The position numbers and the translations under genes are program-made. Positions 1-23,760 of a stretch of 64,000 nucleotides of DNA are shown here, piece after piece. Under the pieces are notes generated by a model that was given only the letters and a program-made list of their open reading frames with translations, ran no database searches and was not told where the DNA came from. The stretch lies in assembly GCF_000150275.1 (NCBI RefSeq), contig NW_002060948.1, positions 3,485,183 to 3,549,182 of the forward strand. The letters run 5' to 3'. The stretch is from Trichoplax adhaerens (lineage: Eukaryota > Animalia > Placozoa). Each line of letters starts with the position of its first letter. Position 1 is the stretch's first letter.

Positions 1-3000
1 CTTCTTTCATCGTCTCCGGGACCATCCTCTCCTTCTTCTTCTTCATCTTCCTCATCACCATTACCTTCATCGTCTCTACCGTCTGCTTCATTTCTTTCTT
101 CGTCGTTTTGATCATTAGGATTTCCACTCTCTCCACGCGGCTCAAATAGGTGGTACCCGTTTTCTACAGAAATCCCTTTTCCGTCATCCAATCGTATATT
201 TTCATCGCTCTCTGGATCCATCGAATCTTTTTCAGGAACTTCTGGACGTTCCTTACGATAAACATAGCTATCAGCGTAATCATTAACATGCTCAGGTGGC
301 ATATCTTGATCAAAAAGTTTCATTGTTTTCTTATAATTATTTCTCGTCTCCTCTTTGGTTATGATGCCATCCCCATTGGTATCCATTTTTTGTTTAATCT
401 TATTTTAAAAGTAATAATTAGCGATAATTTTAGGTAAAACTGTTCAAGTTTACAAAATATCGCTGTAATAGTTACTTGCTTCCATTCGCTAGTCTTTATT
501 ATTTAGATAAAATGCATATAAGCGATTATGATTCATTTTATCTTGTTACGTAATATTACGAATACCTCATTAGCTATCCTTTCAGAACCACCTAATGTTC
601 CCTAGAGTTGAAAATGATCAAACAATTAATTGTCTTAGAATAGAACAAGAGTTCGCATGAAGTTGCATCTTACCACGTAGGCTTCTGTGAATTTCTTGCC
701 ATCAAATATGCCTGATTTACCTATGGCTTTCTTAAATATCGGTCTTGAAAACAGCAATTAAACAATTTAGAAGATAAATATTAGATTCTATATAGCACAA
801 CTTTATACCGTCATATTTATGTGCTGTAATCACTGTGCGAAAAAACAATATCAGACTAACTGTATATGTTGCTAAGCTATAATTATCCAGTTATATGATA
901 ATAAGAGTAATGTAGCTAAATTGTTCGAGCTTTTATATCAACTTGTAATACTTTGACACAATCATCAGCATTATAAGCTTTAATTCAGCACATTTAAGAA
1001 ACAAAGACACATTACAGTCGATCCCTTAAATTTTTGTAAGATTACAGAATATTACTCGAATTTAATTGTATGGAATGGTGCCTAAGAAGATGCCTGATTA
1101 AATGCATCTACAGGTAGTCTATCATAATTTCATCATGAAACCAATATTTCATACGAATACTACTGTAAAAGTGAAGTAGTTCACTATGAATTAGATATTA
1201 TGTCAGAAAATTTAAAAATTTAATTCTAATTATTCTAGGTGCTAGAATTTTTGAACGTGAAATATCTAATAGAAATGCACACGAATGTTAGATAATTTTC
1301 TTTTCAGTACAAATATTTAATCTAATTTATCGAATTTTATTCGATAGCTTGTACGTAATGTTTATTGAAAGATTTCTATAACTGTAACTTACGAGACTTC
1401 ACTTCGTGTAAATTGACGATATTCATATTGCAAAGTATTTGCTGGATCCATTTCATTGAATATAATCATATTTTTCCATGACTGCATAGGTAAAGCCTTG
1501 ATATCATCAACTGATATGGTTTCCTTATCATCAGTTATTTGCAAGCTATCTTTGTACTAAAGATAAAATATAGAATCAAATTATTGCTTTGGGCTTGCCC
1601 AAGTAGATTCAGTACAGAAAATTCATTCTTAAAATTTCAAGCATGAACATTTATTTTCTTTCTGCTCTTAGTTACAACGTACTATTTTATATCCTTTTTG
1701 ATACTTCTCTCCTTCAAATTCACCAAGATAATCCTTTAAAGTAGAAGATATATTAAATATAGGCAAGATAACATCAAGATTATTTATGACTATCATACGC
1801 TTTCAACTAATATGATGAGATTAATTCAAATATGTAGTAAGCTATAATGCAGAAAATAGTTGCATACCCTGACAACATGCTTCAGTAGTTTTTTTGCGGG
1901 TAGAATCGACTTCTTTGCTTTTTTAAAAATATGTAGGAAGCTATCCCTATTGGCGAATATTTAAATTGCCTTAGTAGGTGAGCAATAGTTATAACGATAT
2001 ATCTACATAAAATTGAACATCTGAAAATAAACCAAGGAACTATCCTTTAAAAATGATAACGATATTATCATATATTAAAATTACAGTAACGTATTTGAAT
2101 AAGTATTTCAAGTTTATATCTAAACCAAAGTTGATATGAACTAGTTCTTAGAGATTAATAAAAATATAACCTATAATGCTTAGGTTCATGTAGACCCATC
2201 GTTAACGAACCAATACCATCAAAATCCCAAGCAACTTCTACATCTGTCAAATTTTTATACGTTGCATTTTCACAACTTTTGCTATCAAATTTTTTTGTAT
2301 GTGTTGTTCGGCGAGAGAATAGATATGAGATGGCCATATTTTTGTCGCCAAAGGATCGCACATGATGTAAAGTACCTAATATTATCATAAGGCAATGTCG
2401 AATTAGATTGCTTGTATTACAATTATGATCGAACACTTTTCAATATATAGCATTAAAATCCAAACCCATAAATTTTACTTTCTCTGAGGTCAACATATAC
2501 TCATGTTTATAATTATACATATAGTAGTCTTAATCATTCTGGAACATGGCTCGTACTTAATTACGATCTAATATCAATTTAATATACATAGCTGTTTATA
2601 GTCTATTTATGCAATTGGTGGAAACTTGAGTATACATATTACATATTGGATCATCGCCTCATTTCAATCTGTAAAGCAATTTCAAAAGCATAAGCTCACC
2701 GTAAGGAACATAGAGACAATCGCCGGCAGAGACATTAGCATACCAATACGGACAATCTTTAAATTTGGAGAACTGGATTAAATCAACTTTATCTACTTTT
2801 AAAACAGAATAACCGCCACCATCCATTGCTGGTTCTCTTGCTAAAGGTACCATATGTTCATATTTGGGGCTAATGAGTAACCAGTTTTTGGTTCCATTTA
2901 ATACACAATTAAGAATATTTGCTATTTATTGAAGAGAAATAACTTGATATCAAAATGTAGCATTACTTGAGGATATCTTGACTTCAAAATGATTATTAAT

Positions 3001-3712
3001 GGTGATTAGAAAATGTTATTCTACTATTCAATAATCTGCAAGATTAGAGATGGAACTAAATTTCTACTCTAATATTGGCTTGTAGAATTGAATAGGTAAA
3101 GATACATTAAAAACATAATGATGTGGACGCCATCTTTTGAAAAGTAATATCGCAATAGTACTTACGAGCATCCTTGTGTAACAAACTTTTAGTTCCTCCA
3201 TTACTCATCCAGTAATTGATTTCAACTAAGGAATCCTCAAAAATACCACAGGATAAGCAAGGTGGAACAAGAATATCGCGATACATTGGTTTAGGCAATT
3301 GGGAAACGACATATTTATTTTCTTCGACATAAGTCGTTAGAAAATTCTTGATAGTGTCACGACCTAAACCTAAATCACCAGCGGGAATACCCTGAGCTTC
3401 TTTTTTTTTCTCTAATTTTACGCTATACTTCCCGTATACATCTTTTAAGTATTCATCCGTCCATAAAGTTTTAGCTGGAAAATTTTGAGCTGCCCCTTTA
3501 AGTAGAACTGGTCGTCTTTTACTAACATATTTAGACCAAAATTCTTCAGCTGGATATGGCTCATTCATGATATCTACATGGCCGTCAGAATCACGATGTA
3601 AACCTATCTCTTGTAAATGACCCCTTGGAACTTTGCTCGATTCTTTTCCATCGATTTTGGCTAAAGAAGCGAATAATAGGCACAAGAAAGTAATTCCTTG
3701 CATCCACTTCAT
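1..3712 (-). CDS. Secretory-pathway JmjC/cupin-like 2OG-Fe(II) oxygenase with EF-hand and acidic tail, paralog 1 (3' end outside window)
   Basis: Exons with GT-AG and consistent phase: 3712-3166, 2921-2700, 2375-2171, 1946-1868, 1733-1683, 1556-1393, 743-674, 601-566, 398-<1. Signal peptide MKWMQGITFLCLLFASLA. JmjC motifs WMSNGGTKSLLHKD, NCVLNGTKNW, AGDCLYVPYGTLHHVRS (H-x-D...H intact). EF-hand loop DTNGDGIITKEE, then a D/E-rich tail. Confidence 0.9.
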
Positions 3713-5567: not shown

Positions 5568-5890
5568 AACTATCATTTTAGAGATGTTCTAGATAACAAA
5601 TAGTAGCAAGGCATCAACTTTATCACCTCTACGTATGTTTACTGTATGAGTTTGTTTGGTTAGCCATCATCGATCGGCATTATAATTATCAAATGGATGA
5701 TAGTTTTAATTTTATGGCAAAGCGAGCTGCTATGTCATTGCTTTTCAAATTAGAGCTTGTCCAAAAGCGAATGAAAATTTCAATTACCATTTTAAAGACG
5801 TTCTAGTTAAGGAATAACAGCAAACCATCAATCTTGTCACCTCTATAATTACTATTAATTTGTATGGTAGGCCATCATCGATCGGAATAA
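5568..5890. repeat. Degenerate direct duplication (~110 bp unit, copies ~214 bp apart)
   Basis: Copy 1 ~5568-5683: aactatcattttagagatgttctag...tcacctcta...ggttagccatcatcgatcggcat. Copy 2 ~5782-5890: aattaccattttaaagacgttctag...tcacctcta...ggtaggccatcatcgatcggaat. Confidence 0.8.
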
Positions 5891-6445
5891 TCCTTTAGTC
5901 GTTCATTACTCTTTTGCTTTTTAAGATTTTAACCCTTGTACGTACATTAGAAATTAAATTTAAACTAACTACGTGTCTGCGGATGGAGGTTGAAGTTAAA
6001 GATTATAAAGCAATACTAAAATTGAATAAGAAATAAAGCTGTTATGCTATTGATGTTCCTAATAGCAACGAGGATCATTAAAATAGCAATACTTCTATAA
6101 AGTACATAGGTAGTACTAAATCGAGAACAAACGCTAACGATAAGTTTGCCAAAAATATTTATTAAGTGTAATCATTCTCCCTAATACGCCAAAGAAATAA
6201 TATTGGAACTGTCAAATAAACACTATCGGGCATGTTGTAGTAGAAATCATTCATGAACGGCAACTATTCTCTCTAAATACACCAACAGTTAATCTAGGCA
6301 CTAGTAAATATCTAGTAACGATCATTCTGTCAAAGCCACTCGAGGCAAATTATAATAATATAAGATACAAATAGGAACAGTCTTTTGGAAACTCCTAATA
6401 ACGAAATATAATAATAAATGCGAACAGTTGGCTAAGATAAAAATA

Positions 6446-9400
6446 TTACAATTCATCGCGAGAAGATTTCTTTTCATTCATTTCATCATTAATGCTTCCA
6501 CTATCAGTTTGTTCAGGTATTCCTTGGTTTCCGATTTCAGCAGACTCTTTCTTTAATTCCGTCTCCTCTGATCTTAGAGGATCTTCACCATCCGATATAT
6601 CACTTTCATTGCTATCTATTTCGTCAACTTTACCATCCGGATTAGCAAACAAACCTAGAACTTCATCCAACTTACTTAGTCTTTCCTCTTTACTAACTTT
6701 TCCGTTTCCGTTAGTATCAAATTTTCTCATAATCTATAGAAAGAAATTAATCATCATGTTCCATTCTTGCCCTCATTTTCTGTTAATGTACTGTAAATTC
6801 TTATATATTAAAGATCTAAAGTACTTATATATTAAAGCTATTACTACTATAGTACGTAGTTATCTAAATTTAAACCTTTTAAATCAGTCATTACCTCGTT
6901 TGCTGATTGCTCAGACCCTGATAGTAATTTCTAAAATATGGAATAAACCAGAGTATATTAAATTACCATGGCAATAATGAGAATTTGTCCCAATTTCGTG
7001 CTTGCATTGCGGAATTATATTGTCTATAATAGTAAATTAATAAATTATTGGATGGTTGTACCTCATAGAAAACGGCAAATTTTCTAGTATTAATTCCTCC
7101 AGCTTTATCAATGGTTTTCTCGATTATCGATCTGGAAATAGTTATAAAGATTGTGTAAGTATATAACGACAGTAGCAAACTTCTACGGCTAGAAAACCAT
7201 AATCCAAGACGTATTGTATGCAATTAGAGAATGATTTTAGGCCAAATGTAGCTCCATAAAATATATTGTATTATCTTTTAGTCACAAGATTATTCATAAT
7301 TTAGCATTAAATGGTTGATCGCGAAAATATATACCCCTAAACTTGATAAGACTTGACTTACCGTATATCTTTCTTTGTATAGATGCGATATTCATATTTT
7401 AAAGGATTTTCCGGATCTAAATCAAAGTAGTATATTAAATTTATCCAAGATTGCAGAGGGAGGTCAGCGATCTCATCAGTAGTGACAACGTTTTTATTCT
7501 CTATCTGGAGATTTTTTCGTATCTATGTAGAAGCAAGTTTTAATTAGTAGCCACATCTATCAATAAAACGTTGCTTACAAATCAGATTAGAGACTAAAAT
7601 CTTTAGTATCGGCTGGCTTTACTTACTAATTTTATCACTTTGTTTATGTGATCAGAGCCTCGATCAGGAATGGTACGCTTAAATAAGTACAGTATAAAAT
7701 TTAGTTCGATAAGGCTATAAGAATCAAACACCGTCACCATGATCAATACCTATGGAAAAACGCTAGAAGTACAATTTTGTATCTTGATTTCTGAAATAAC
7801 AGGTTTCTTTTAAAAAAAATGATATACTACCTTGAGTCTCCTTAAAAGCACTTCAGTCCTTATTTTTTTCTTGCCTTTAAATGCTTGAAATGCAGCTTCT
7901 CTATTTCAAGTGAAGAAAATAATTAATAAATTGAACAAAATTGGCCAAACTACTACTGCTATCAATTCCAATCTTAACATTTCACTTTTTCGTAGAAATT
8001 AAAATCTCAAACGTAAGGTTTCAAGAATTTAAAATCTGTCAAAAGAATCGTGATTAATGTGTAATATTAGATTTTCATGATGATGAAATTCACAGCGATG
8101 GCTTACTCAAAGTATAAAGTTATAGATACACAAATTTAAAATTTAGTATGTAACAATTTGGTATGTAACTTAAAATATTGAATCTCTAGAATCATTAACT
8201 AAAAATTGTAATAAAGTCCAGCAGTAACATTGCTTAACAAAATTTCTTCCAAGCTTGAAGGCACAGAATTAAACTTGTAAAAACCTGTATAAATTAGGAT
8301 CTTGCAAATCAACAACTGGGGTTGTATGGCTATTAATTTGCCAATCAAACATGGGGTCCCGAATATTTTTATATTTCGACGTTTGACAATCCTGGTTGTT
8401 AAACTTTTTCAAATGCGATACGCTTTGAGAAAATAAAAGCGAAACACGCATATTTTTAACACCATCTGTTCTTACTTGATACAAAGAATCTGAAAGGTAA
8501 AATTAATAAGAATTACCAAAAAACAACTATCATAACCTAAGTAGCTAATATTCAGGCCTTAAATTCTCTTATTAAGTTTCTTCAATATGTTTAAGTAATT
8601 ACAATTGACGGATTTTGGACCTAAATAATAGGCAACTAAAGCGAATATATGCTTTGCTGCACTTTCTCCTACTTAGTGTAAACCATATAATTCATTTCTT
8701 CTGCCTTAAGGTGACTATAGTAATCGGAAAACTTACCATGAGGAAGATAGATGCAGTCTCCTTTAGCTAAGGTAGCATCATAGTAAGGGCAATTTGAAAA
8801 TGCTGAATATTTCTGTAAGTCCACTTCATCAACTTGTAAGGCAGAACGTGTACTTCCATCTTTGGCTATCTCTTCTACCATGGGTACAAGATGTGCGTTT
8901 TGATTATCGATTAATATCCAATCACTCGTTCCATTCAATAAGCAATTGATCGTATTAGCTATTGGCATTAAAAAGAATTTGTGTCAAGGCAGAAACGGAG
9001 TCATTATTATTATAAATGGATTGCTATAAATAATACATGTATAGTATGTAGTGGTAGTTAAGATTATTAGTACCAAGCATTTTATCTCAATTATTCTATT
9101 TGCAGTTAATACGTATAACTTATTTATCTAACAGAACGCTATTAAGTAGTAATACAGTCATTTTACAACATAGCTACCAATATTATAGAAGCAGTAGCTC
9201 TTATTACTGATATATACGGTAGGATAATGATCAAAGCTGTAACTTTAGTAGTCTCTTTGGTAAAGCCCTTCATATCTGCAGTTTTTTTATTTTTGCATAA
9301 AACCCGTTAAAGACTTCGCAGTGTTAAGGAATAATTCGTATAAGACTTCTAATCCTAATAGATAGTATCTTGGGTGTGAAGCACGTAAGATGGATGCCTA

Positions 9401-11248
9401 ATAAAGAGCTAAAGATTATGATGATTTCAGTTAATTACAGGAGTGATGTGTTAGGGGATAAGAACCCATACACTGCAAAGATCTATCCGATAGCAGTACT
9501 CCTACTTCTGCTCATTAATTATGCAACAGGTAGGCGTTCATAACTATGAACATTTATCTTCCTTGTCTCCGGTCTACGTGTATTCTAACGCCCTTTATCC
9601 CGAATTTATGGCCAAACTGTTACAAATTTCACTTAAATCGGGAATTACAACATACGAAGCCAAGTGCATATAAGCATTGACTAAGAACTTTGCGTGACAT
9701 ATTTACCTTAATTTTTGAGTTCATGAAGGATGCTGGTTCTTATATTTATAGTGCAGATATTACCAAACCCAAGCTCAATCAGAAGGAATCGTAGGATACA
9801 TTAAAATGCTACAGATGACCGTCAATGTGGGTCAGTATGCTCGCATTATTATTGCAATTTGAAATGTCTTAGACTAATTTACTATTGCTCGTATAACTCA
9901 TCAATATAGTACGAGACAAAGGGGAGATGAAACACTTTATTTCAACAACTATAATATTGACCAACCTATTCTATTTGCCGATTTGTGATTGATAGGAACA
10001 GTAAAATGGACTTATCTTATCAAGACCATCTTATTACAACTTGTTAAAGTACCGTAATCATCTGCAATCTTATGGCTTCAATACTGTTCATATATCTAAT
10101 GGTGGAATTGATTTAAGAAGTTACTATTGATCAACTGCTATTCCCGTGCTCTAAGATTCTATCGAGAGTTAAAGCGTTGCACATCCCTAGCGTACGCCAA
10201 GAATACTTCGAGTACGGAATAGATTTATGTCATACGAAATTTACTGTATACCCTCAATAGGATTATCAGGCAAATCTTGTAAAATCTTGACGAATAACAT
10301 ATGGAATCTTTCGATCATAACAGAAATCTATTCCAATATTTCATCATGCCAATGATCAACATTAATATAATAAAAACGTTATAAGGCATCTGGGTTATAT
10401 GTTGGAACATCAATTTTGATTCGTCTAAATGCTGTTTGATGAAGTAAAGAAAGAGCTTACACTACATAACGTCATTTCGGTCTGCAATATTAGAGCGAGT
10501 GCGGTGCTTATTAGAGCTATTAATCGACTACAATATCTTACCATGCTAACATCATTAAATAATAGTATACGAGATAATATTTACAAAATCATAATAAATT
10601 TTCAAGTGCCCATTTCAGCAGTTACATACGCATTGATATGAGGAAATTGATGTATCTAACAAAGTCAGCTTTCACTAGTGAAGCTGATGAATATGCTCTT
10701 AACTTACAAGCATCTTTCCGTAGCGAACTTTTACTGTTACCGGTGTTAAGCCAAACATGTACATCAATCATAGCGGTTGTAAATGAGCCACATGAAAGGA
10801 AAGGTGGAATTAGCACATCGCGTTGCATGGGTTGAGGCAATTGAGAATCGATGCATTTGCTTTCATTGACATAAGTTGATATAAAATCATTCAAGGATTG
10901 GCGTTCTAGATGCCCTTGGTCATTAGAGATTTCTTCCTTTTCATTGATTTTAGCAGAATAAATCCAATAATTTCCATAAAAATTTCTTAAATAATCATCA
11001 GTCCATGAGTCTATCGCTGGAAAATCTAATGCCGCTTGCTTTAGTAAGACTGGTCGCCTTTGACCAACATACTTGCTCCAGAATTCTTCGGCAGAAATCG
11101 GTTCATTGAGTACATCAATATGCCCTTCAGCAGCACGATGTTGTCCTAATGGTTTAAGATGGCCCTTAGGTAACTTATAATTGTCATCCGCATTGCCCTG
11201 ATTGACCAAGATAGCAACTAAAAATAACACAGTAATTTTATAAGTCAT
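6446..11248 (-). CDS. ER-luminal JmjC/EF-hand/RDEL protein, paralog 2; catalytic residues lost (predicted pseudo-enzyme)
   Basis: Exons 11248-10708, 8958-8737, 8489-8285, 7900-7831, 7677-7627, 7522-7362, 7131-7062, 6930-6895, 6733-6446, all in phase with no stops. Signal peptide MTYKITVLFLVAILVNQGNA. Motifs read SSLRKD, GTSDW and PHDSLYQVRT where paralogs 1 and 3 have SLLHKD, GTKxW and PYGTLHHVRS. EF loop DTNGNGKVSKEE. Ends in RDEL*. Confidence 0.9.
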
Positions 11249-13366: not shown

Positions 13367-16300
13367 TTACAATTCATCACGAGAATCTCGGTTGGGATAT
13401 TCGTCGACGTCTTCTTCTTCATCTGGCATCTGCATTTCTTCCTCCTCTTCATCGCCATTTCTTTCATCCTTATTTTCTCCCTTAGTTGAAAGTTCTTTTC
13501 GGCTCGTAAAAAGTGGATCTTCTCCATCCTCGAACTGAGTATAACCTTCTTTCACACGAATTCCTTCACCTTCCCCTTTTCGGTAAAATTCATACTTTTT
13601 TTCCGCATCACCATCATAGTAGATTTCCATTGGATCAACCTTTGGCACCTGTTCCCTTTGATCGCGATACACAAAAACATCTGCATAGTCGTTAACGTGT
13701 TCAGGTGGCATATCATCTTCAAATAAGTTTAATACACGTTTCATGTTCTTTTTTCGCTCCTTTTTGCTGATTTTGCCATCTTTATCGTTGTCAAACTCTT
13801 GTATAACCTATATAATCATCATCAATAAATTGTTTAAAGGTTGGTTATTATTATTTTCATTTTATGAATTACGCGTGTGTTATAGTCGTCAAATCGAACA
13901 AGATAAAACTTTTATTAGCTCGCGTTCTATATGATATTCTAACTAATATATACAAGAGAAATACTAGAAATGCGCTGACCTCAATAGCTACTCGTTCCGA
14001 TCCACCCAGGTTACGCTAGATAAAAAATATTTTATAGCCGTTCAAGCCAAGCATTAAATAGAAGCTCTAAACCTAATTCGATAGCTTAAATATTATGTGT
14101 AACGCATTCAAAGCTTAATAATATTTGCATATATAAAAATTTACCCTATAATATTCTTTAAATTGTTCACAGTCAATGCCACCCTTTTCATCTTTTACTT
14201 CACGAAAGACCTCCCTATAGATCGTCAAAATGCGATAACATATAAGATTAGGTTTGAAAGTAAGCAATTTTTACGCAGAAGTTCCAGATATAATAATCAA
14301 CATAATTAAAATTATTGTATAGCGCAATTTATTATTGCCGTTCTACCGATGATGATCACGCACAATTTTAACAAATCAAGTATCAAATACAATTAAAAAA
14401 GCTATGGTATCCTTTTAAAATGGATATAGGGAACAATTCTGCAAACTTTTTAATTGATATATTGTAAATAGGGTACAATTATTGATACCTCATTTGATCT
14501 TTAGTAAACAAGCGATACTCATATTGTAGTGTGTTAACAGGATCCAATTCTGATATGAAAATTATTGGTTTAAACGCATCCATAGGTAAAGCCGATATTT
14601 CGTCCACGGTGATAAATTTTTTATTTTTCAATTTAAAGTTTTCAATAGCCTATATTAGAAAACACCTATTTCTTACTCTCTACGGTGTATATGCAATATG
14701 AAATATCAAGCATAGATTTCAATAGATTCAAGATAGACTGGATAATTAATATAAATTGCATTCAGTAATTTTTGTTGCAACAATAATATAATCCATGGTA
14801 AGATAGAAATTCCTATAAAGTGCTTACTTTCTTTCTTGCTTCACGTCTTTTTTGTGGATCTTCCGGAAGTATAGTCTAAAACGAATCATTTTAGGTGATT
14901 ATTGAGCTAGATATTCCTGATTTGTCATAAATATATTTCCAATGAAGTAAGCCTTGATATAGATAAGTGCCTTATTCCAATTATCGTTCCAGTACTTTTT
15001 AGCTAAACTATTCGTAAGATCAGCTGATGACGTAGGAAGATAGCATGATTGCATAAAAAATGAAAATATTTTCATACTGCTCTGTAGTTTTTGGTAATCT
15101 ACTTAATGTCATCTTATAAAATTGTTGTAGAACGTCGTTAATAAAGCAGAAATTGATAGCGGTTAATTCTATGATTCTTTATATTCTACCGAACATTATT
15201 TTCGTAAAATTGTAATAGAATGTTCTTAGTAACGAGATGGATAATGATATTTTAGCATTATTACAACATATACTTTCAGTATTTTTAGTGCGCTACGCCA
15301 TGATACGCGATCTTTATTAAATTACACTAAACATATCTGAAGCTATTGTGCTCTAAAATATAATTCTCTAGTATTATATCAACATCTAGAGTTTCTGAAT
15401 AATTCATATATCATTTTCTTCCTCTACAGTATCGCTTATAGCGGATACTGGATATTATATCAATTCAACAATCTATACTAAGTGTAGCAATACCTGTCCT
15501 ATCCTTTTCATGAAGAGTTTAGTAGTTATATTCTTCTTTCCTCGGAATGCGCGTAATGCTGCTCTCCTATATGTTTATTATTAAGATTAGTGAACACCTA
15601 AGCATAAATTTTCAACTGTATCGTGAAAATTAGTGTCGCTGAAAAGTAGTAGTGGGCAGTATAAGCCTTCTTTCTTTAACTGACAGAGTAAATATTCGAT
15701 TGATTAAAATGTTGTTAATACATTATTCTCATTAAACTTTGTGTCATATAACTTATAAGAGTTGTTCTCATATTTGCTGACAGTTAGAGCCGATCACAGA
15801 TCAACTACAGTATGTCGTCAATTTTTGTTTTAAGAGCATACCTGTATACTGCTGGTTCTTGTAATCCCATCGTCAGTGTCGTGGCCCCATCAAAATCCCA
15901 AGCAACTGTTGAATCCGCTAAGTTTTTAGGTCCTTGTTTCTCGCAACCGGCGTCATTAAACTTTTTAGAATGCGATAAACTGCGAGAAAACAAAAAGGAC
16001 ACGGCCATGTTTTTTTCGCCGTATGATCGGACATGATGTAATGTACCTAAAGAGACGATGACGAGTTAATCAATTAACTTTTCTTAGTTATAGACGCTAT
16101 GGTCGTTCGCAAAAATAAAGTTTATCCATTAAGACATTAGTTGTTAATATCTTACTTTGCTTTATTTATTATTATATAAAGACATTATTAAGAGAAAATT
16201 GGTAGTCGATATTAGATCTTTGAAATTATTTTTTCGGTTAAATGTTGTTGAATGATGCAACTTACCATAAGGGACGTATAAGCAATCTCCTGCTGATACG

Positions 16301-18210
16301 TTAGCAATATGATATGGGCAATCGCGGAATTTTGAGAACTGGATTAAATCGACCTTGGTTACTTTAAGTACAGAATAACCTCCACCATCCATAGATGGCT
16401 CTTTTGCCAATGGTACCATATATTCATGCTCAGGTCTAATCAAAATCCAATCTTTCGTCCCATTGAGTACACAATTGAGGATATTGGCTATCGAAAATTG
16501 AATAATTACATGAACTTAAGATTAATGCGTATTATTTGCGATTAAAGCTATATTAAAACTACAGCAACAAGGCCTTATAATTCAACGTGCTTAATGAAAT
16601 GCTCACGGGCGACGAAAGAGTACGTTCAAGTCACGAGAATTGCAACAGTTGGTCAAAATGAAATAAAATCTACATGGTATACTACATCTAGCAGAGTCTT
16701 AGAGATTCGATGACAAAATCAGGGCTTCTGGTTCATTTGATGATCAGATAAATTTGAAGATTTACGAACTTGTACATATATCATCCTTAATATTAGCGAG
16801 ATTCATATGGAAGCAATGACAAACTAAATTGATCAAAGAATATCTCCAGTTATTCATCCAGAAAGGCTTCGAACCAATGGTCTTTCTAGCGTAACAGTAA
16901 ATTAAGTCTAATTCAAAATAATGCTATCGGTTCCACGTATTTTATAATTTTCTTTTTGAGTCTGAAGTTCATATTTTTGTAATCTAATTGAACACATTAG
17001 CAAACAAGGATTACTATTTCAGTAATCGTGTTTATAACACTTTCTAACCGTTGATGCTTTTATTAATAAGAAAAGTCTTTCTCTCATTTATTAAATCAAT
17101 CATGATCGTCAAATGAATGTTTAAGCGATCCACCCATCTCTAACGTAAAGTCAATATTAGTGAAGTAGTAAACAAGCATGTCTCCAAGCAGTCTTGCGTT
17201 TTCTTTCTGCCACCTTCTATCTTAGTAAATAGGAAATAGACTACGATAATTATGCTATACTAATTATCATAGAAAAATAATAAACTATTTCGCATCTAAG
17301 AGATAAGTTTAACAGTCCTTTGACAATCGGTTGAAATAAAAAAATGACAATGCCAAGACGAGAGACTCTTAACCTTATACAACGTGATGGATATGAAATA
17401 TGTACAGTTTACGTTTAAGTAATATTAATAATTGAATCTTAGTTAGGGCTCAAATGACGAGTCGTAATCGTTGCTCTTTAATTTTTGACTACACTAATCT
17501 CGTCATAATTAAAAATTAACTTTTATAGGCTATACAATGTGCATAGAAACACAAACTCATGATTATGATTGCGATGTGAAAAGTATCCAAGTAACAGATC
17601 AGTAATTTGATCCTGCTAGTATGTCATTGCTTAGGAGTTTAATGCATTTCAAATTCTACTTACGCGCATCTTTGTGTAGTAAACTCCTGGTTCCACCACT
17701 ACTCATCCAGTAATTTACTTCAACGATAGAATCATTAAAATCACCGCATGCTAGACAAGGAGGAACTAAGACGTCGCCGTACATCGGTTTAGGGAGTTGA
17801 GAAACGATGTACTTATTCTCCTTAACATAAGTTGATACAAAATGTTTAAGAGAGTCGCGAGCTAAGCTAACATCACCGGCTGGATATTGATAACCTTCTC
17901 TTTTGCTCTCTAATCGAACATTTAAGTGGCCATACTTTTCCGATATGTACGGATCAGTCCATAAAGATTTGGCCGGGAAATCTTTAGCGGCTCCCTTTAT
18001 AAGTACCGCTGTCCTTTTACTAACATACTTTCTCCAAAATTCTTCTGCTGATGGTATTTCTTGCAAAATATCAATATGACCTTCCGAATCGCGGTGTAGC
18101 CCTAAATCCTGCATATGACCACGAGGGACTTCTTGCTGACTCTCCTTTGCCAAAGATAAATTGGCGATTGCCAACAAAAATCCAATCAAAACGACGTAAA
18201 AACGATTCAT
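13367..18210 (-). CDS. ER-luminal JmjC/EF-hand/RDEL oxygenase, paralog 3
   Basis: Exons 18210-17664, 16487-16266, 16046-15842, 15566-15494, 14875-14828, 14649-14489, 14214-14145, 14015-13980, 13807-13367. Signal peptide MNRFYVVLIGFLLAIANLSLA. Motifs SLLHKD, GTKDW, YGTLHHVRS intact. EF loop DNDKDGKISKKE, acidic tail, RDEL*. Confidence 0.92.
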
Positions 18211-20411
18211 TTTTTATTCGCCAATTTACGTCAAAAATTATATATCGTCGTAACAACGGCCACTAAACTTGATCTATTCCAAGACGCAGTAATCGTGACT
18301 AAATGAACTGGATGGCTAAACTACTAGTTAAGGAAACTATAGAATGAAACACTTCTTTTGTTTATCCTTCTTATTCTTATGATGATCTAACATTCATCAG
18401 GTCGTCGATGAACAAACAGTTCCTTGAATAGATGACGTCTATTTATTAATTCATATTTAACTTCCATCAAATAAATTATCAATTAGCTCTAGTCGATTAT
18501 CTACATCAATAATAGGCGTCTTTTATGACTTACAGAATCGTAATAGGATATAGACTCACATAGTTATGGCACAAAACATTCAATATGTAAAGTTAAAAGC
18601 TTTCAATTGTCCTTATTTTAGCCTATTAAGAAATTACTACTATTTAAATTCAGTAGATTCCACCCATATGAACCGATTGTGAACCGAACTCTTGGCATAT
18701 CTACTGTTATTCGACATGAATTACAAACAGCTAAATTAATATTAAATGCTGCTTCTATATATTATAAGCTGAGAAATGACTTTATTGTGATTAGATTAAT
18801 ATACTGATTCTGAATAATATGGAAAATATAGACGTCGCAGATTATATAAATTTTTAGCATATAAAATTAAATTTCACTTTTTGAGTAAGAAATACCTTAT
18901 GCTAATCGCCAATGATCGATCACTAATTAATATAGGGTTATAGTAGTTCTAAATTGAAACAAAGAAGCAACATTTTATTAATTATAATTGCTGGATATTA
19001 TGTGATGATGACAGTAAGACGACGCTGAAGAAATGGCAAAGGATCATTTGACATTGGACTAGCCAAGGAAATGAAGCTTTCATCTAGTTTAACGCATACT
19101 GTATTTACTCGTATACTGAGTGATCATGAGATTGATGTGTGAAAATGTTTAGTCTAGGGTAGTAGCTAATTGAATCATTACCATTTCACTAAGCTGGATC
19201 GTTAAATAGATAACAATTTAAGATAGATATCGATAAAAATCATCTTTGAAAGTGATTTAGACTTAATATAAGAAAAAGTTCTTTCGATTCCCATCCACCA
19301 TTTCACAAAGAACACTCAGAATTTACAGAAATCATATTTTTGTTGTCAACGTATAACTAATATCACTTGATAACATAGACATGATGATGAAAATAATGAT
19401 TTCAATTTATGGTTTATTTTGATCAGAATGTTCACGATAATTTCGCCACAAATGTTAGCACTACATAATGAAAATATTCAACAACGTAGATGTGATATAA
19501 ATTCATCACCATTTCGAACACATTCTATTAGTTTTACTTTGTAGCTTTCAGTGAAGAGCTACCGTGCTAAGATAACTCAACTTTAATTCCTGTGGTACTT
19601 GCAAGTTTCATGCCACGATTTTAGGTGGTAAATTGAATTCTTATTCATTCATTTTTAAATCATAGTATCATATTATTTATTACAGAGACTTTCTATAGTA
19701 AAAATATCATATTAGTGATTTAAAGCATGGGAAACTGCCTGCTAGTGGCTCGAAAGGGGAAGGGAAATTATTTCGTTGAATAGCTTGAGTGCTCGTAGCA
19801 ACGCAGTTTTTTAATCAAAAGTCAAATTCAAAATTCAAAAGTCCAACAATGTGACGTTAGCTAGTAATAATATATTAGAAGTCAAATTTCGTACAAGTAA
19901 CTACTAGCACATACTGAAATATAAATAGATCTTCGTACTTTTTGATATGGCAAAAGGATTAGCCATCGATAATATCGAAAGAAACTTTAGTAGATCGTGA
20001 AACAGTAGAGCTTATTATCATCGTCATTATTTACTTTCTATGCCTTTTCTTAGCATGATAAAAAAAAGTTCAGCTCTTATAGCTAATTCTATTGTTATAA
20101 TTAACTGTCTATAATCGTATAGGTGTGCCTATCATTGAATTTTACGTGATTTTCACCAAATACAGTCATAAAAAGAAACCCTATGCATGTCTGTGATGTA
20201 GCGAAAGCTTAGAAAAGGAATACGGTAACAAAGCTCCAAGCGTTTTATAGATTACTTTCGACTGTGGCCAATTTACTTTAGCGCTTAGTATCTATATTTA
20301 TACCACTCATTTCATAAGCAAGACTAAATGAGATATAATAATTAGAACGTATCAATTCTTATTACATTAATTCCTGAACTTATTTTATTGCAAATACATT
20401 ATGTACAAATT

Positions 20412-23400
20412 ATGGATGGCAATAACAAATACTTTGTGTTGATACTGCTCCATTTGTCACTAGCTTCCACTCATACTCTGCGTGGTCATTTACAACCTCT
20501 CGGTTTTCAACGTGATACTGATGGCGATATAACTACTCTTTCTATCTTACCAAGCAATGAAGAGTTTTATCAACTGTTGATAAACAAGGAGACTGCTTTA
20601 CTTAAAAATGCTGCTAAGCGTAGTCCAGCTATTGATCACTGGACAGAAAAATATTTAAAAGAAAAGTATGGCAATCTTACACTTAAACTAGAAGGGAAGA
20701 GTGAAGATCAGACAAGACCGGAAGGAAACTTAGGCTTAGGATTTGATACTATTAGTAACTTCATTGACAGCTACCATATCCAACCAAAGTATGCGGTTAC
20801 ACAATTACCTGATCCAATGCGTCATGAAATCTTCGTTATGCCATTTATGAGATGTGGACCCTTATCCACGAGTGTTATTGAAAGCCATTTATGGATGAGC
20901 TCAGGGCAAACCAGCAGCAGATTACACCGAGATAACAGTAAGACTACATTAGAAGTAAACCAGTATCCATGTCCATTTTGATAGCCAATTTTACTCAATA
21001 TCGAATGAGATGCCAAGAAATAATGTCTATAACAACATTTAAAGAAAAAATCTAAATAAAAACTTTCAATATAGATAGGCTCTTTATTGTATCTTAATGT
21101 TAATTTATAAATACTCGTTCAAAACATTTATAAAACGACTGAAATCATTCATTTCCTTACTCTTTTTAGCTTATACTCTTCATTGTTCAATTAAAGGCAG
21201 GAAAGATTGGATACTAATGGACTCTAAACATCTAGATAAAATGTACATTAATAATCAGGTGGACAATTTCTCAGGATCATCTTCTATCAACCCAGACCGT
21301 GTTAATTTACTACGATATCCTCGTATTGCTGAGATTCCATTTAAACAGGGAAATATTACTCCTGGTGATTGCATTCTGGTACCGCCAGGTACGAGAAAGA
21401 TAGTCTCCATCAGTATGACGACACGATGAGTTAGTTGATTCGTCCTGTAGTAAATTTTTTTCTCACTGCTTATTTTCAGTTTCTAGACGCTTACTACTAC
21501 ACTTGTAAAGTACTCGAAAGCTATCCGAGACATTGCTAATTATTTTTAATTAACTTGAGAATTATCCACTCTAGTCACTTTAAGGCGCGGTACAACTTAC
21601 TATTTAATATAGTCAACACATCTTCTTTAAATAAAGTAGGATCTGATTAATAGTTTAAAGAATGCACTTCCAACAATCGTTGTTAACTGATGCATAAAAC
21701 TAAATGTGCATTCAAATATCGTCTCAAGTAATTTAACACAATTTTATCATTGACGACTAAACCGCCTGTACTATCCTTGTTTAATATGCATCATTGCAAA
21801 CAATATTGGTAGTGATTGTAAAGTGCGTAATACTGTAATTCTACTAATATGCGGTAGCTGATTTCTTCTAAGCTTAAAGTAATCTATTGCATATTTCAAA
21901 AGGTTGCGCCCATCAAGTTCGTTCTCATGGCCCAGTGAATGTTGCCTTTACGTTTTTATTTGAAATTACTGATGACAAACTGAAAAATTTCAATCCTATC
22001 CATTGCAGTCAAGACTATGTACCACTAAGTCAATACCACCTAAGTTGGAGCTACTCAGGTAGTGGAATCCTTAGCATGGGGAATTCTGAATCCAACACAT
22101 TTAGGTACGGTACTATGGATTCTTTAGAGTTACCTTCTAGTGTGGTGTAGCAGTATTAATTAACTTACCTTTATATATCTTGATTTTCTTGATAATTTAC
22201 TCTACAAGAAGCAGTTACTACAACAAGATTCTGCTGCAGTTTGCTGTTTAATTTTTAAAACCGTTTTTGGAATTGGTAGTCTGTCACTATTACTTAACTG
22301 TCCATTATCATATCATAACTTTATCTTAAGTATTAATTAGTTACCGTTCAATTCATGGTTCATGAAGATACATCAGACTTGGACAATAAAGCTTGACGAT
22401 ATCATTTTATATGTAGGAAGGAAATACTAGAACAATGGTTTGGAAAGCGTACTAAAATCCATTTTAATATAATTCAGGATACTTTTGAAGGGGTAATACT
22501 TGATTTGAAACTTACCGTTGATGTCTGTTACAGATTTTTGATCGAATTATTTTCTATATTAGCTACTGAAGTATTATCCTAAAGAAGCAACTAAAGTCAC
22601 CACATTAGTGAAAGACATTGTAAGTTCCTGTCAGTTTGCATCAGTGTAAGAGCATAGCCTATAGCAGTGTTCATTAGATTATGAAATAATGAAAAAGTGT
22701 GACTTTCTCCCTGTAATTCGTTTTTGGGGCCATCATCTATCCGCTCCTTGAAGCTAAAACAATATAATGCCATTAATTCGAATGAAATCGTGTCGAGAGA
22801 AAGATGTGAGTCTATTACAATAGAAGACTGGAGGAAATTCCAATTTATAATTGAATCAGCAACCAATATTCAAAACAATCCTGACTACGAGTACTATCTT
22901 ACTAGCTACAGATTAGTTAGGTATTGCTTCAGAATGATCATACAGTTAACCAATATAAATGAGGAATTCATGCCAATAAAATAAATGATAATGCATTTTT
23001 TTACAGACAAGTAGCCGAAGAAGCAGTGGTCGAAACCTCTGGTTTATTTGACAAAATTAAGTTTAAGAACGGTTATAGGGTAAATAAAATTTGCGTCGAA
23101 TCACTTTTAGTATCTTATATGTTGCGTGTGCATATATGTATAATATACCGCAAGCCTCCAATCTGTAATTAATCTCATGCTGAAGGCATTCATTCGATTC
23201 ATTTTTATAGGCTGTGGGTGGCTCGGGGGCATTCGCAGATAAAGTAAGTCAATCAATTTAGCAGTAATTATGATTATAGTCGTATATCTTTACCAATAGT
23301 ATATTATTTTTAAGTTTTATCATCAAAGTAGTTATTATTGCTGATATATTAATGTTGTGCTACATTAAGTACTTAAGGTGTTAATACGCCTATAAGTACC

Positions 23401-23760
23401 GTACTGCACTGATCGATCATCACCGTCGCCGTTAATAGCTCTTAATTGTATACTTGACCTCTTTCGACATAATAGATCCTTACAGCCTTGGATTCGAATC
23501 AAGACGGACTAATAACTATAAGTGAGGTTGCTAGTAATCTAGATGTAGCATTAGAAAGTTATAAATTGGTTGAGTATGATGATGATGTCAATGTACCATC
23601 CGACGGAGAAGGAGGTAATCAGGAAGACGATGAAGACCGCGGTGGCGCAAGTGAAGAGGAAGATGAAGGAATAGATTCAGAAGAAGATCCTGATGTTGAA
23701 AATAAACAAATGACTTCGTCGTCCGAATATCATAATAAGAAGAAACACGATGAATTATGA
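20412..23760 (+). CDS. ER-luminal JmjC/EF-hand/HDEL oxygenase, paralog 4 (divergent orientation, most diverged)
   Basis: Exons 20412-20937, 21170-21388, 21903-22104, 22417-22492, 22563-22619, 22754-22920, 23007-23079, 23211-23243, 23476-23760 (exon 5/6 borders less certain). Signal peptide MDGNNKYFVLILLHLSLAST. Motifs SRLHRD, GRKDW, PGDCILVPPGCAHQVRS intact. EF loop DSNQDGLITISE, acidic tail, HDEL*. Confidence 0.9.

What the first reader, a model, noticed from the sequence alone, without database searches (positions are those of the whole stretch)
1..23760. Tandem cluster of four ER-resident JmjC oxygenases with EF-hand, acidic tail and RDEL/HDEL: candidate Ca2+-linked luminal hydroxylase system
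Seen in sequence: four genes with the same 9-exon structure and intron phases. Each encodes signal peptide + JmjC/cupin domain of the FIH/JMJD5/JMJD7/TYW5 small-JmjC type + canonical EF-hand loop (DTNGDGIITKEE, DTNGNGKVSKEE, DNDKDGKISKKE, DSNQDGLITISE) + D/E-rich tail. The three complete copies end in RDEL, RDEL and HDEL. Established: characterised small JmjC hydroxylases are nucleo-cytoplasmic; JMJD8 is luminal but has no EF-hand; the known ER 2OG oxygenases (P4H, P3H, PLOD, ASPH) are not JmjC proteins; an acidic tail plus KDEL is typical of ER Ca2+-binding residents such as calreticulin. Inference: a locally expanded, soluble ER enzyme family that hydroxylates secreted substrates, possibly under Ca2+ control. 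I know of no characterised protein with this architecture.
Basis: partly seen in the sequence, partly recalled or inferred. Interest (0 to 1): 0.9.

Follow-up and report, generated by a model that had tools for sequence, protein, structure and literature searches.

The report
ER-targeted JmjC oxygenase gene cluster
This stretch of the Trichoplax adhaerens genome holds four members of a larger tandem cluster of genes for JmjC-type oxygenases that carry a secretion signal, calcium-binding EF-hand motifs and an ER-retention tail; this enzyme family is spread across invertebrate animals, and no paper describing it turned up in the library searched.

Summary
The window is Trichoplax adhaerens. It holds four paralogues (A–D). 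Each fits a 9-exon model with identical intron phases. Each has a hydrophobic N-terminal signal, a Cupin_8/JmjC domain, an EF-hand region, an acidic tail and RDEL or HDEL. Spliced RNA contigs from three runs in two studies confirm all eight introns of copy C, including the signal-peptide and RDEL exons.

The four are part of nine paralogues on this contig, and about 19 in the genome, nearly all ending in xDEL. The family is not placozoan-specific. Hundreds of members occur from sponges to lampreys. All are uncharacterised or auto-named JMJD5/JMJD7/TYW5-like. None was seen in jawed vertebrates, insects or nematodes.

By sequence and fold, the closest solved relative is the arginyl hydroxylase JMJD5. 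The Fe and 2OG ligands are conserved in at least 56 of 63 relatives. Copy B has lost three of the four, as an earlier scan note also found.

My best reading is soluble ER-luminal 2OG oxygenases with a C-terminal EF-hand domain. Function, substrates and calcium control are inferred. The relationship to vertebrate JMJD8 could not be tested. I rate it a new variant of a known kind.

The parts
1..3712 (-). Paralogue A (not matched to an annotated model). The 9-exon model gives 612 aa. Exons: 3166-3712, 2700-2921, 2171-2375, 1868-1940, 1683-1733, 1393-1556, 674-743, 566-601, and 398 down to 72 nt before the window start. Ends ATRDEL. HxD at 3170-3178. EF loop at 348-383.
   Evidence: The model rests on homology; exons 4 and 5 are tentative.
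6446..11248 (-). Paralogue B, TRIADDRAFT_57500 (P0001). The 9-exon model gives 548 aa and ends SSRDEL. Exons: 10708-11248, 8737-8958, 8285-8489, 7828-7900, 7627-7677, 7362-7522, 7062-7131, 6895-6930, 6446-6733. Three catalytic ligands are lost: His to Arg at 10712-10720 (RKD), the 2OG Lys to Ser, and the second His to Tyr. EF loop at 6683-6718.
   Evidence: The database model P0001 (530 aa) omits the small exon 5.
13367..18210 (-). Paralogue C, 600 aa, confirmed by RNA. Coding exons: 17664-18210, 16266-16487, 15842-16046, 15494-15566, 14828-14875, 14489-14649, 14145-14214, 13980-14015, 13367-13807. RNA contigs extend at least from 13300 to 18261-18300. HxD at 17668-17676. EF loop at 13757-13792. 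Ends DSRDEL.
   Evidence: Eight GT-AG junctions appear in RNA contigs of X5, X6 and X18.
20412..23760 (+). Paralogue D, TRIADDRAFT_57502 (P0003). The 9-exon model gives 545 aa. Exons: 20412-20937, 21170-21388, 21903-22104, 22417-22492, 22563-22619, 22754-22920, 23007-23079, 23211-23243, 23476-23760. HxD (HRD) at 20925-20933. EF loop at 23491-23526, which matches PROSITE PS00018. Ends KKHDEL.
   Evidence: P0003 lacks exon 6. Its Trichoplax sp. H2 orthologue P0273 has exon 6 but lacks the start of exon 2.
17664..18210 (-). Exon 1 of C. It encodes the signal peptide (n-region, about 15 hydrophobic residues, then SLA followed by K), the conserved GH-x-x-x-LG motif, and the first half of the JmjC fold up to HKD.
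13980..14649 (-). Exons 6-8 of C. With the start of exon 9 they encode the EF-hand region. In B, C and D only the last loop is canonical (the upstream region of A was not checked); relatives in other phyla have further canonical loops upstream.

Best explanation
A, C and D, and most of their paralogues nearby, encode soluble proteins that reside in the endoplasmic reticulum. A cleavable signal peptide takes them into the lumen. The C-terminal RDEL or HDEL returns them from the Golgi through the KDEL receptor.

The N-terminal two thirds is a JMJD5-like JmjC double-stranded beta-helix with a complete His-x-Asp...His iron site and the 2-oxoglutarate-binding Lys. I therefore expect them to be Fe(II)/2OG oxygenases.

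I propose that they hydroxylate side chains of proteins passing through the secretory pathway. A basic residue (Arg or Lys) is the most likely target, because the Glu that holds the substrate guanidinium in JMJD5 is conserved.

The C-terminal EF-hand domain and the long acidic tail bind luminal Ca2+. That either stabilises the enzyme or shapes its substrate groove, as in P4H-TM. It could also make the enzyme part of the low-affinity Ca2+ store.

Copy B keeps the fold, the cysteines, the EF-hand and RDEL but has lost three of the four catalytic ligands. It is a non-catalytic paralogue, possibly a substrate-binding or regulatory partner.

What is shown: gene structure, transcription and splicing of C, domain content, conservation of the catalytic residues, fold similarity and taxonomic spread. 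What is inferred: localisation, activity, substrate class and the effect of Ca2+.
For: Gene structure and expression:
- RNA-confirmed 9-exon transcript of C, running from the signal peptide to RDEL.
- Same exon and phase pattern in A, B and D.

Targeting:
- Hydrophobic N-termini and no later membrane-spanning segment; the highest 19-residue Kyte-Doolittle average after residue 30 is 1.41 or less.
- Of 277 full-length relatives, 63% match the PROSITE ER-retention pattern, 85% end in an xDEL-like tail, and 88% have a hydrophobic N-terminus.
- All nine paralogues on this contig end in an xDEL-like tail, and so do at least nine of the ten genes in the other three clusters.
- Four cysteines are invariant in 57 of 57 relatives. 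In the profile alignment, the three that fall within the region aligned to cytosolic JMJD5 have no Cys opposite them. This fits disulfides in an oxidising lumen.

Catalytic domain:
- Cupin_8 in 42 of 42 members scanned.
- Ligand conservation among 63 relatives plus gene C: H 62, D 56 (5 His, 2 Glu), K 60, H 62.
- Closest solved sequences: JMJD5 at E 7e-36, then JMJD7 at 1e-27, TYW5, FIH and JMJD6.
- The AF2 model (pLDDT 79.5) superposes on the JMJD5 catalytic domain at TM 0.81-0.84 and rmsd 2.6-3.3 A.
- JMJD5 E238 makes a salt bridge to the substrate Arg (PMC5862942). It aligns to a Glu kept in 51 of 57 relatives, and this residue is Ala in B.

EF-hand region:
- Canonical 12-residue loops sit at the same position in the four window copies and in four of the other five on the contig (E, G, H, I).
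- The C-terminal domain model has pLDDT 85.6. All of the top 50 Foldseek rows are EF-hand domains or constructs containing calmodulin. VIA-align places residues 85-152 on EF-hand pairs at Z 5.2-5.8 and about 3 A over about 60 residues.

Precedent: P4H-TM is an ER-luminal 2OG oxygenase with an EF domain whose Ca2+ affinity lies in the ER range (PMC7948501).
Against: - No localisation, activity or Ca2+-binding data exist for any family member.
- No signal-peptide predictor was available. The signal peptide is judged from hydrophobicity and small residues at positions -3 and -1 only.
- The EF-hand Pfam scores of the window proteins are below the curated cut-offs (19.5-22.9 bits against 25.4-25.9).
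- Only 43% of relatives keep a canonical loop.
- The EF-hand fold matches are modest: Foldseek E 0.016-0.07, and VIA Z below 8.
- JMJD5 Y243, the second residue that contacts the substrate Arg, is not conserved, so the substrate class is a weak inference.
- The structure was modelled on copy B, the inactive one, because spliced models of A and C could not be submitted.
- Expression was checked only for C.
Confidence: 0.6

Rival explanations
1. They belong to the same clade as vertebrate JMJD8, the one JmjC protein already shown to be ER-luminal. Under this reading JMJD8 is a shortened vertebrate remnant that lost the EF-hand region and the xDEL. This would make the family 'JMJD8-like' rather than new.
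For: - JMJD8 has a signal peptide, is ER-luminal, and groups with JMJD7, HSPBAP1, JMJD5, TYW5 and FIH (PMC5684140).
- One subfamily of the present family, found in molluscs, an annelid, a brachiopod, a nemertean and a flatworm, has the same unusual His-x-His iron motif that JMJD8 has.
- No member of the family was seen in jawed vertebrates, which is where JMJD8 exists.
Against: - None of about 240 listed relatives carries a JMJD8 name. The automatic names are JMJD5, KDM8, JMJD7, TYW5 or MINA-like.
- Lampreys have family members that keep HxD.
- The Trichoplax copies have HxD, not HxH.
- In the tree, the sampled deuterostome members of the HxH-bearing subfamily that were checked (a starfish and an amphioxus protein) have HxD. 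The His variant may therefore have arisen within Spiralia.
- No JMJD8 sequence could be reached with the tools, so orthology was not tested.
Confidence: 0.2
2. The proteins are mainly Ca2+-buffering or chaperone-like ER residents, comparable to the CREC proteins or calreticulin. In this reading the JmjC fold serves as a binding module and not as an enzyme.
For: - Long acidic tails: 29-46 Asp+Glu in the last 120 residues.
- EF-hand region and xDEL, as in CREC proteins.
- Copy B shows that the fold is kept without the ligands.
Against: - The iron and 2OG ligands are kept in at least 56 of 63 diverse relatives, over a range from sponges to lampreys. That is hard to explain without catalysis.
- B is the lone relative with three of the ligands changed, and it sits on a long branch (1.28 against 0.25-0.42 for A, C and E).
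Confidence: 0.1
3. They are luminal oxygenases, but they act on a non-protein substrate such as a small molecule, a lipid or a glycan. Their relative TYW5 likewise acts on tRNA rather than protein.
For: - The JmjC-only group includes a non-protein oxygenase, TYW5, which is the third closest solved relative.
- Large lineage-specific expansions (about 19 genes in Trichoplax; many in amphioxus and echinoderms) are typical of enzymes that diversify on varied substrates.
Against: - The closest relatives, JMJD5 and JMJD7, hydroxylate protein Arg and Lys.
- The JMJD5 substrate-binding Glu is conserved.
- The other 2OG oxygenases known in the ER (collagen P4H, P3H, PLOD, ASPH, P4H-TM) act on proteins or are thought to. 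This point is from established knowledge.
Confidence: 0.1
4. The xDEL is not an effective retention signal here, and the proteins work beyond the ER, in secretory granules or outside the cell.
For: - Some family tails depart from the classical pattern, for example LDEL in upstream copy G, and HEEF, HTEL and RVEL in relatives.
- CREC relatives such as Cab45 reside beyond the ER (PMC2120788, listed).
Against: - A, B, C and D all match the PROSITE ER-targeting pattern, and so do 63% of relatives.
- Conservation of the extreme C-terminus across phyla argues that it is used.
- Fe(II), 2OG, ascorbate and O2 are known to be available to ER enzymes.
Confidence: 0.05

Closest known systems
JMJD5 / KDM8 (human arginyl C-3 hydroxylase; PDB 6F4P, 4GJZ and others)
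   Same: It is the closest solved relative by sequence profile (E 7e-36) and by fold (TM 0.81-0.84). It shares the HxD...H triad and the 2OG Lys. The Glu that binds the substrate guanidinium (E238) is conserved.
   Different: JMJD5 is nucleo-cytoplasmic and has an N-terminal helical domain (an Atlas JMJD5 cluster carries PF24472). It has no signal peptide, no EF-hand and no xDEL. In the profile alignment it has no Cys opposite the three family-invariant cysteines that fall in the aligned region. Y243 is not conserved in the family. Sequence identity is only about 20%.
JMJD8 (vertebrate ER-luminal JmjC-only protein)
   Same: It has a signal peptide, sits in the ER lumen, and belongs to the same JMJD5/JMJD7/TYW5/FIH group (PMC5684140).
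   Different: JMJD8 is described as a JmjC-only protein with no other functional domain (PMC5684140), so it has no EF-hand region; it is about 264 aa and I know of no acidic tail or xDEL in it (from memory). It is thought to be held in the ER by an uncleaved signal peptide. It has His in place of the iron-binding Asp, whereas the window genes have Asp. Orthology was not testable here.
P4H-TM (ER transmembrane prolyl 4-hydroxylase)
   Same: It is an ER-luminal Fe/2OG oxygenase joined to a Ca2+-binding EF-hand pair whose affinity lies in the ER Ca2+ range. Its EF domain borders the substrate groove (PMC7948501). It is the best analogue for how the window proteins may work.
   Different: Its catalytic domain is of the P4H type, not a JmjC/Cupin_8 domain. 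Its EF domain is inserted inside the catalytic domain rather than appended at the C-terminus. It is membrane-anchored, not soluble with an xDEL.
FKBP14/FKBP22 and other ER FKBPs; CREC proteins (reticulocalbin, calumenin, Cab45)
   Same: The layout is the same: signal peptide, then a domain, then an EF-hand pair, then an ER-retrieval tail. FKBP22 has two EF-hand motifs and is a rough-ER resident (PMC6965642). CREC proteins combine EF-hands with HDEL (PMC3270221). That FKBP14 ends in HDEL is from my own knowledge.
   Different: Their enzyme module is a prolyl isomerase, or absent altogether. There is no oxygenase domain.
JMJD7 (lysyl C-3 hydroxylase)
   Same: It is the second closest solved relative (E 1e-27; Foldseek E about 1e-15).
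   Different: It is cytosolic or nuclear, and has no signal peptide, EF-hand or xDEL.

Membership tests
JmjC-only / Cupin_8 2OG oxygenases (JMJD5, JMJD7, TYW5, FIH group) | Match to Pfam Cupin_8 (PF13621) above the curated cut-off | tested here: met
   Exon 1 of C scores 35.8 bits against a cut-off of 27.4. P0001 scores 88.2 bits, and 42 of 42 relatives match.
JmjC-only / Cupin_8 2OG oxygenases (JMJD5, JMJD7, TYW5, FIH group) | His-x-Asp/Glu...His iron triad and the 2OG-binding Lys | tested here: met
   Met in A, C and D (HKD or HRD, G-x-K, and a His in the H-x-V motif). Not met in B (RKD, Ser, Tyr).
JmjC-only / Cupin_8 2OG oxygenases (JMJD5, JMJD7, TYW5, FIH group) | Double-stranded beta-helix fold that superposes on a solved member | tested here: met
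   The AF2 model of P0001 superposes on JMJD5 at TM 0.81-0.84 and rmsd 2.6-3.3 A over about 250 columns.
JmjC-only / Cupin_8 2OG oxygenases (JMJD5, JMJD7, TYW5, FIH group) | Fe(II)- and 2OG-dependent turnover | not testable with these tools
   Needs a biochemical assay.
JMJD5 orthologue | N-terminal helical KDM8 domain and nucleo-cytoplasmic location, with no signal peptide | tested here: not met
   The JmjC core starts about 25 residues after a hydrophobic signal. No other N-terminal domain is found by Pfam.
JMJD8 | His replacing the iron-binding Asp (HxH), conserved among JMJD8 proteins (PMC5684140) | tested here: not met
   A, C and D have HxD, and B has RxD. HxH occurs only in a spiralian subfamily.
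JMJD8 | JmjC-only architecture with no other domain | tested here: not met
   An EF-hand region, an acidic tail and an xDEL are all present.
JMJD8 | Orthology by phylogeny with vertebrate JMJD8 | not testable with these tools
   No JMJD8 sequence could be retrieved. It is absent from the PDB list and from the named hits.
EF-hand Ca2+-binding domain | Canonical 12-residue loop with liganding residues at positions 1, 3, 5, 9 and 12 (position 7 binds through its backbone carbonyl) and Gly at position 6 | tested here: met
   One such loop is present in each of A-D at the homologous position. Only D matches the strict PROSITE PS00018 pattern, because position 13 is polar in A, B and C.
EF-hand Ca2+-binding domain | Pfam EF-hand match above the curated cut-off | tested here: not met
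   The last exon of B scores 22.9 and 19.5 bits, and P0001 scores 21.9 bits, against cut-offs of 25.4-25.9. Ten of 42 relatives match at E below 0.01.
EF-hand Ca2+-binding domain | Helix-loop-helix pair fold | tested here: inconclusive
   All of the top 50 Foldseek rows are EF-hand domains or constructs containing calmodulin, but E is only 0.016-0.07. VIA gives Z 5.2-5.8 and about 3 A over about 60 residues for the last pair. The upstream pair is barely tested.
EF-hand Ca2+-binding domain | Ca2+ binding | not testable with these tools
   Needs ITC or a 45Ca overlay.
Soluble ER residents retrieved by the KDEL receptor | C-terminal [KRHQSA]-[DENQ]-E-L (PROSITE PS00014) | tested here: met
   RDEL in A, B and C, and HDEL in D. 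174 of 277 relatives match.
Soluble ER residents retrieved by the KDEL receptor | Cleavable N-terminal signal peptide and no membrane span | tested here: inconclusive
   Hydrophobic N-termini with small residues before the likely cleavage site. The highest 19-residue Kyte-Doolittle average after residue 30 is 1.41 or less. No dedicated predictor was available.
Soluble ER residents retrieved by the KDEL receptor | ER localisation | not testable with these tools
   Needs microscopy or fractionation.

The most novel reading that the evidence does not exclude
An ancient, animal-wide family of soluble ER-luminal JmjC hydroxylases exists, in three subfamilies found from sponges to lampreys. These enzymes install a so far unassigned hydroxylation, most plausibly on Arg or Lys, on secretory or matrix proteins, under the influence of luminal Ca2+. 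The family has escaped study because it appears to be absent from jawed vertebrates, insects and nematodes. Trichoplax expanded it to about 19 genes, including a dedicated pseudoenzyme.
Probability: 0.4. Interest if true: 0.8.

Novelty: new variant of a known kind. Interest (0 to 1): 0.66.

Why it matters
Protein hydroxylation in the secretory pathway is currently credited to the P4H, P3H and PLOD enzymes, ASPH and the enigmatic P4H-TM. JmjC hydroxylases are regarded as cytosolic or nuclear, and JMJD8 is a poorly understood exception.

A conserved, multi-copy, ER-retained JmjC family with an attached EF-hand domain would add a second oxygenase class to the lumen. It would also offer enzyme candidates for orphan modifications of secreted proteins in marine invertebrates. 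From my own knowledge, hydroxy-arginine and hydroxy-lysine in adhesive and toxin proteins are examples.

The family also gives a natural system for asking how luminal Ca2+ and O2/2OG sensing are coupled. It may show where JMJD8 came from.

The work is directly testable. The genes are intact, at least one is expressed, and homologues exist in tractable species such as Nematostella, Ciona, sea urchin and amphioxus.

Tried and rejected
- **Word-indexed search with the whole protein.** Searching with P0001 returned only 4 hits. The acidic-tail words probably crowded the 8000-candidate limit. I replaced this with alignments of the JmjC cores.
- **Attempts to bring in vertebrate JMJD8.** I tried a profile of the HxH subfamily, the ESM Atlas, PDB sequences and a literature search for JMJD8 in early-branching animals. 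None returned a JMJD8 sequence or a relevant paper, so the JMJD8 question stays open.
- **Conserved N-glycosylation site before the GDC motif.** Seen in several Trichoplax copies, but present in only 7 of 57 relatives. Dropped as evidence.
- **Aravind-group survey of the ER Ca2+ system (PMC7016017).** It does not mention JmjC, cupin or hydroxylase.
- **Cytosolic JMJD5 or JMJD7 paralogue reading.** Rejected because of the signal peptide, the xDEL, the invariant cysteines and the EF-hand region.
- I re-ran it without that string.
- **Joined models.** The joined (spliced) models of A-D were built and used only inside scripts, for lengths, phases, a local alignment and a local tblastn. They were not sent to any database, family, structure or complex tool. 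Those searches used single exons by reference (alignment A1) or database proteins (P0001, P0003 and relatives). As a result the only structure model of a window protein is of copy B.

Full report
**What is there**

The window is AT-rich (about 32% GC) and comes from Trichoplax adhaerens. The database protein P0001 is identical to copy B and is named TRIADDRAFT_57500. P0003 is copy D, TRIADDRAFT_57502. The window lies on a 5.98 Mb contig, at G000:C1409:3485183-3549182.

Four paralogous genes lie at 1-3712(-), 6446-11248(-), 13367-18210(-) and 20412-23760(+). Their first exons are 43-61% identical to that of copy C. Each first exon ends one base before a GTAAG donor. Pfam Cupin_8 matches exons 1 and 2 of C and D.

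**Splicing and expression**

I laid four public runs on 13300-18300. Contigs from three RNA runs (X5, X6 and X18, from two studies) carry eight joints. After the allowed 0-3 base shifts, all eight are GT-AG on the minus strand. The DNA-like run X1 has none.

One 1483-base contig in X18 carries seven of the eight joints and runs from 13738 to 18261; the first joint (13805 to 13978) is carried by the contigs of X5 and X6 that reach past the stop codon. Joining the nine exons gives a 1803-base open frame of 600 aa. So the signal-peptide exon and the RDEL exon are both in mature RNA.

Using C as a guide, A, B and D can each be modelled with nine exons. The phases are identical (0,1,1,2,0,0,2,0,0) and the exon lengths nearly so. 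Every intron is GT-AG and there are no internal stops. The products are 612, 548 and 545 aa.

The small exons 4 and 5 of A, B and D are the weakest parts of these models. The public models P0001 and P0003 each miss one exon. The joined models were used only inside scripts.

**The protein**

Each product begins with a short polar stretch followed by 10-15 hydrophobic residues and small residues before the likely cleavage site. No later segment is hydrophobic enough to span a membrane. Next comes a motif conserved across the family, G-H-x-x-x-L-G. The JmjC fold follows.

The iron ligands (His and Asp at the end of exon 1, and a His at the start of exon 3) and the 2OG-binding Lys (in exon 2) are present in A, C and D.

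After the JmjC core comes a helical region of about 150 residues, then a highly acidic tail with 29-46 Asp+Glu in the last 120 residues. The proteins end in RDEL (A, B, C) or HDEL (D). Copy A is cut by the window edge. Fetching the upstream DNA showed that it ends ATRDEL, 72 nt outside the window.

**EF-hand region**

Pfam sees them only below its cut-offs. Only D passes the strict PROSITE pattern.

An AF2 model of residues 312-468 of P0001, built with 38 homologues, has pLDDT 85.6. It shows four helix-loop-helix units.

All of the top 50 Foldseek rows are EF-hand domains or constructs that contain calmodulin: calmodulin, centrin, troponin C, calcineurin B and sarcoplasmic Ca-binding proteins. 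The E-values are only 0.016-0.07. VIA-align places the last pair on EF-hand lobes at Z 5.2-5.8 and about 3 A over about 60 residues.

In relatives from other phyla the upstream units also carry canonical loops. I therefore read this as a four-EF-hand domain of which B, C and D keep only the last loop canonical (the upstream region of A was not checked). This is supported but not proven.

**Catalytic domain**

A profile of 57 JmjC cores finds these solved relatives:

| Solved relative | E-value |
|---|---|
| JMJD5 | 7e-36 |
| JMJD7 | 1e-27 |
| TYW5 | 6e-18 |
| FIH | 4e-16 |
| JMJD6 | 9e-10 |

The full-length AF2 model of P0001 (pLDDT 79.5, pTM 0.71) superposes on JMJD5 catalytic domains at TM 0.81-0.84.

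Ligand conservation across gene C plus 63 family members with ER-type tails:

| Ligand | Conserved | Other residues |
|---|---|---|
| First His | 62 | Arg in B, 1 gap |
| Asp | 56 | 5 His, 2 Glu, 1 gap |
| 2OG Lys | 60 | Ser in B, 1 Arg, 1 Thr, 1 gap |
| Second His | 62 | Tyr in B, 1 Gln |

Copy B is the only one that has replaced both His residues and the Lys (Arg, Ser and Tyr). This agrees with the earlier scan note s1-735858. B also sits on a long branch.

Four cysteines are invariant in all 57 cores. In the profile alignment, the three that fall within the region aligned to cytosolic JMJD5 have no Cys opposite them. That fits luminal disulfides. I could not measure distances in the model.

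In JMJD5, E238 makes a salt bridge to the substrate arginine (PMC5862942). It aligns to a Glu kept in 51 of 57 relatives, and that position is Ala in B. The cation-pi partner Y243 is not kept. This is my reason for favouring a basic residue as substrate, and it is a weak reason.

**Extent of the cluster and the family**

A six-frame search of the whole genome with the exon-1 profile found nine copies on this contig, eight of them within 45 kb. It also found tandem groups of five, three and two copies on other contigs.

All nine copies on this contig end in an acidic tail with an xDEL-type tetrapeptide: HDEL, LDEL, RDEL, HEEL, RDEL, RDEL, RDEL, HDEL and RDEL. At least nine of the ten genes in the other groups do so too.

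An exhaustive HMMER search found 1218 proteins at E below 0.001 and 494 below 1e-10.

Named relatives come from these groups:
- Non-bilaterians: sponges, cnidarians and placozoans.
- Deuterostomes: echinoderms, hemichordates, amphioxus, tunicates and lampreys.
- Spiralians: molluscs, annelids, a brachiopod, nemerteans, a flatworm and a rotifer.
- Others: an acoel and a barnacle.

All are 'uncharacterized', or carry mutually inconsistent automatic names: JMJD5-, KDM8-, JMJD7-, TYW5- or MINA53-like. No jawed vertebrate, insect or nematode appeared among about 240 listed hits.

Of 277 full-length members:

| Feature | Share of members |
|---|---|
| Matches the PROSITE ER-retention pattern | 63% |
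| Ends in an xDEL-like tail | 85% |
| Hydrophobic N-terminus | 88% |
| Canonical-type EF-hand loop | 43% |

A quick ML tree shows three well-supported subfamilies. The window cluster belongs to the 'long' subfamily of about 500-600 aa. That subfamily also has sponge, cnidarian, echinoderm, tunicate and amphioxus members. Within it, A, B, C and upstream copy E form a clade (SH-aLRT 98).

**How it most likely works**

*Shown:* these are transcribed (C) or intact (A, B, D) genes for secretory-pathway proteins. They have a JMJD5-like catalytic domain whose ligands are under long-term conservation, an EF-hand-type domain and an ER-retrieval tail.

*Inferred:* they are soluble luminal Fe/2OG oxygenases acting on proteins in transit, and Ca2+ bound by the EF-hand domain and acidic tail stabilises or tunes them.

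The inference has two precedents. P4H-TM is an ER-luminal 2OG oxygenase with an EF domain next to the substrate groove, and its Ca2+ affinity lies in the ER range (PMC7948501). The ER FKBPs and CREC proteins show the same layout of signal peptide, domain, EF-hand pair and retrieval tail.

Copy B is best read as a non-catalytic paralogue.

**Rival readings**

The rivals are membership of the JMJD8 clade, a purely Ca2+-buffering role, non-protein substrates, and a post-ER location. Each is set out with its own test in the rival explanations.

The JMJD8 question is the main gap. JMJD8 is ER-luminal and has His in place of the iron-binding Asp (PMC5684140). A spiralian subfamily shares that His. 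But no JMJD8 sequence could be obtained, no relative is named JMJD8, and the Trichoplax genes have Asp.

**Novelty**

Four full-text searches found no paper that describes a JmjC protein with an EF-hand and an ER-retention tail. The library is limited to open-access text.

The proteins themselves are already in public databases, unannotated. Each component has a precedent: the JmjC-only hydroxylases, the ER location of JMJD8, and the EF domain of P4H-TM.

I therefore rate this as a new variant of a known kind, of solid but not exceptional interest.

Noticed in passing
upstream of window: G000:C1409:3463282-3485182 (L001-L003) and 3414752-3418026 (L004): There are five more paralogues with the same architecture: E (ends HEEL), F (ends RDEL, with no canonical EF loop in its last exon and a very diverged JmjC), G (TRIADDRAFT_57495, ends LDEL), H (TRIADDRAFT_27062, ends HDEL, on the plus strand) and a more distant copy I (ends RDEL). 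The 'cluster of four' is the edge of a cluster of nine.
   Followed up: partly
L005-L011 (G000:C1410:8076001-8106000, C1412:2724001-2742000, C1414:7662001-7680000): Three further tandem groups of the family, with 5, 3 and 2 genes. They belong to other subfamilies, and nearly all end in RDEL, QDEL or HEEL. The two on C1414 are arranged head to head and have very long acidic tails ending KHEEL.
   Followed up: partly
window 6446-11248 (-): Copy B is an intact 9-exon gene that has lost both iron-binding His residues, the 2OG Lys and the Glu that aligns to JMJD5 E238. It keeps the four invariant Cys, the EF loop and RDEL. It has the longest branch in its clade. Its expression was not checked.
   Followed up: partly
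window 7627-7677 (-) and 22754-22920 (+): The public gene models appear mis-spliced. P0001 (TRIADDRAFT_57500) omits a small exon 5. P0003 (TRIADDRAFT_57502) omits exon 6, which its Trichoplax sp. H2 orthologue P0273 includes.
   Followed up: partly
relatives P0079, P0085, P0086, P0093, P0095 (alignment A3): A spiralian subfamily (molluscs, an annelid, a brachiopod, a nemertean and a flatworm) has His-x-His in place of His-x-Asp, followed by a further conserved D-H-x-x-H-C. This is the same unusual Asp-to-His change reported for vertebrate JMJD8.
   Followed up: partly
window 17664-18210 (-) and the equivalent exon 1 of A, B and D: A motif G-H-x-x-x-L-G directly after the predicted signal-peptide cleavage site is nearly invariant across the whole family. 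It has no counterpart in the part of JMJD5 that aligns. Its role is unknown.
   Followed up: no
window 13300-13366 and below: RNA contigs of X5 and X6 extend about 530 bases beyond 13300 on the 3' side of gene C. This suggests a long 3' UTR, or read-through towards the region at about 12770.
   Followed up: no
window 57131-58636 (+): An intron-less ORF of 501 aa with several long hydrophobic segments in its C-terminal half. It may be a multi-pass membrane receptor.
   Followed up: no
window 52413-53489 (+): An intact 358-aa ORF that an earlier scan note (s1-735887) reads as a domesticated IS630/Tc1-like transposase. I did not examine it.
   Followed up: no
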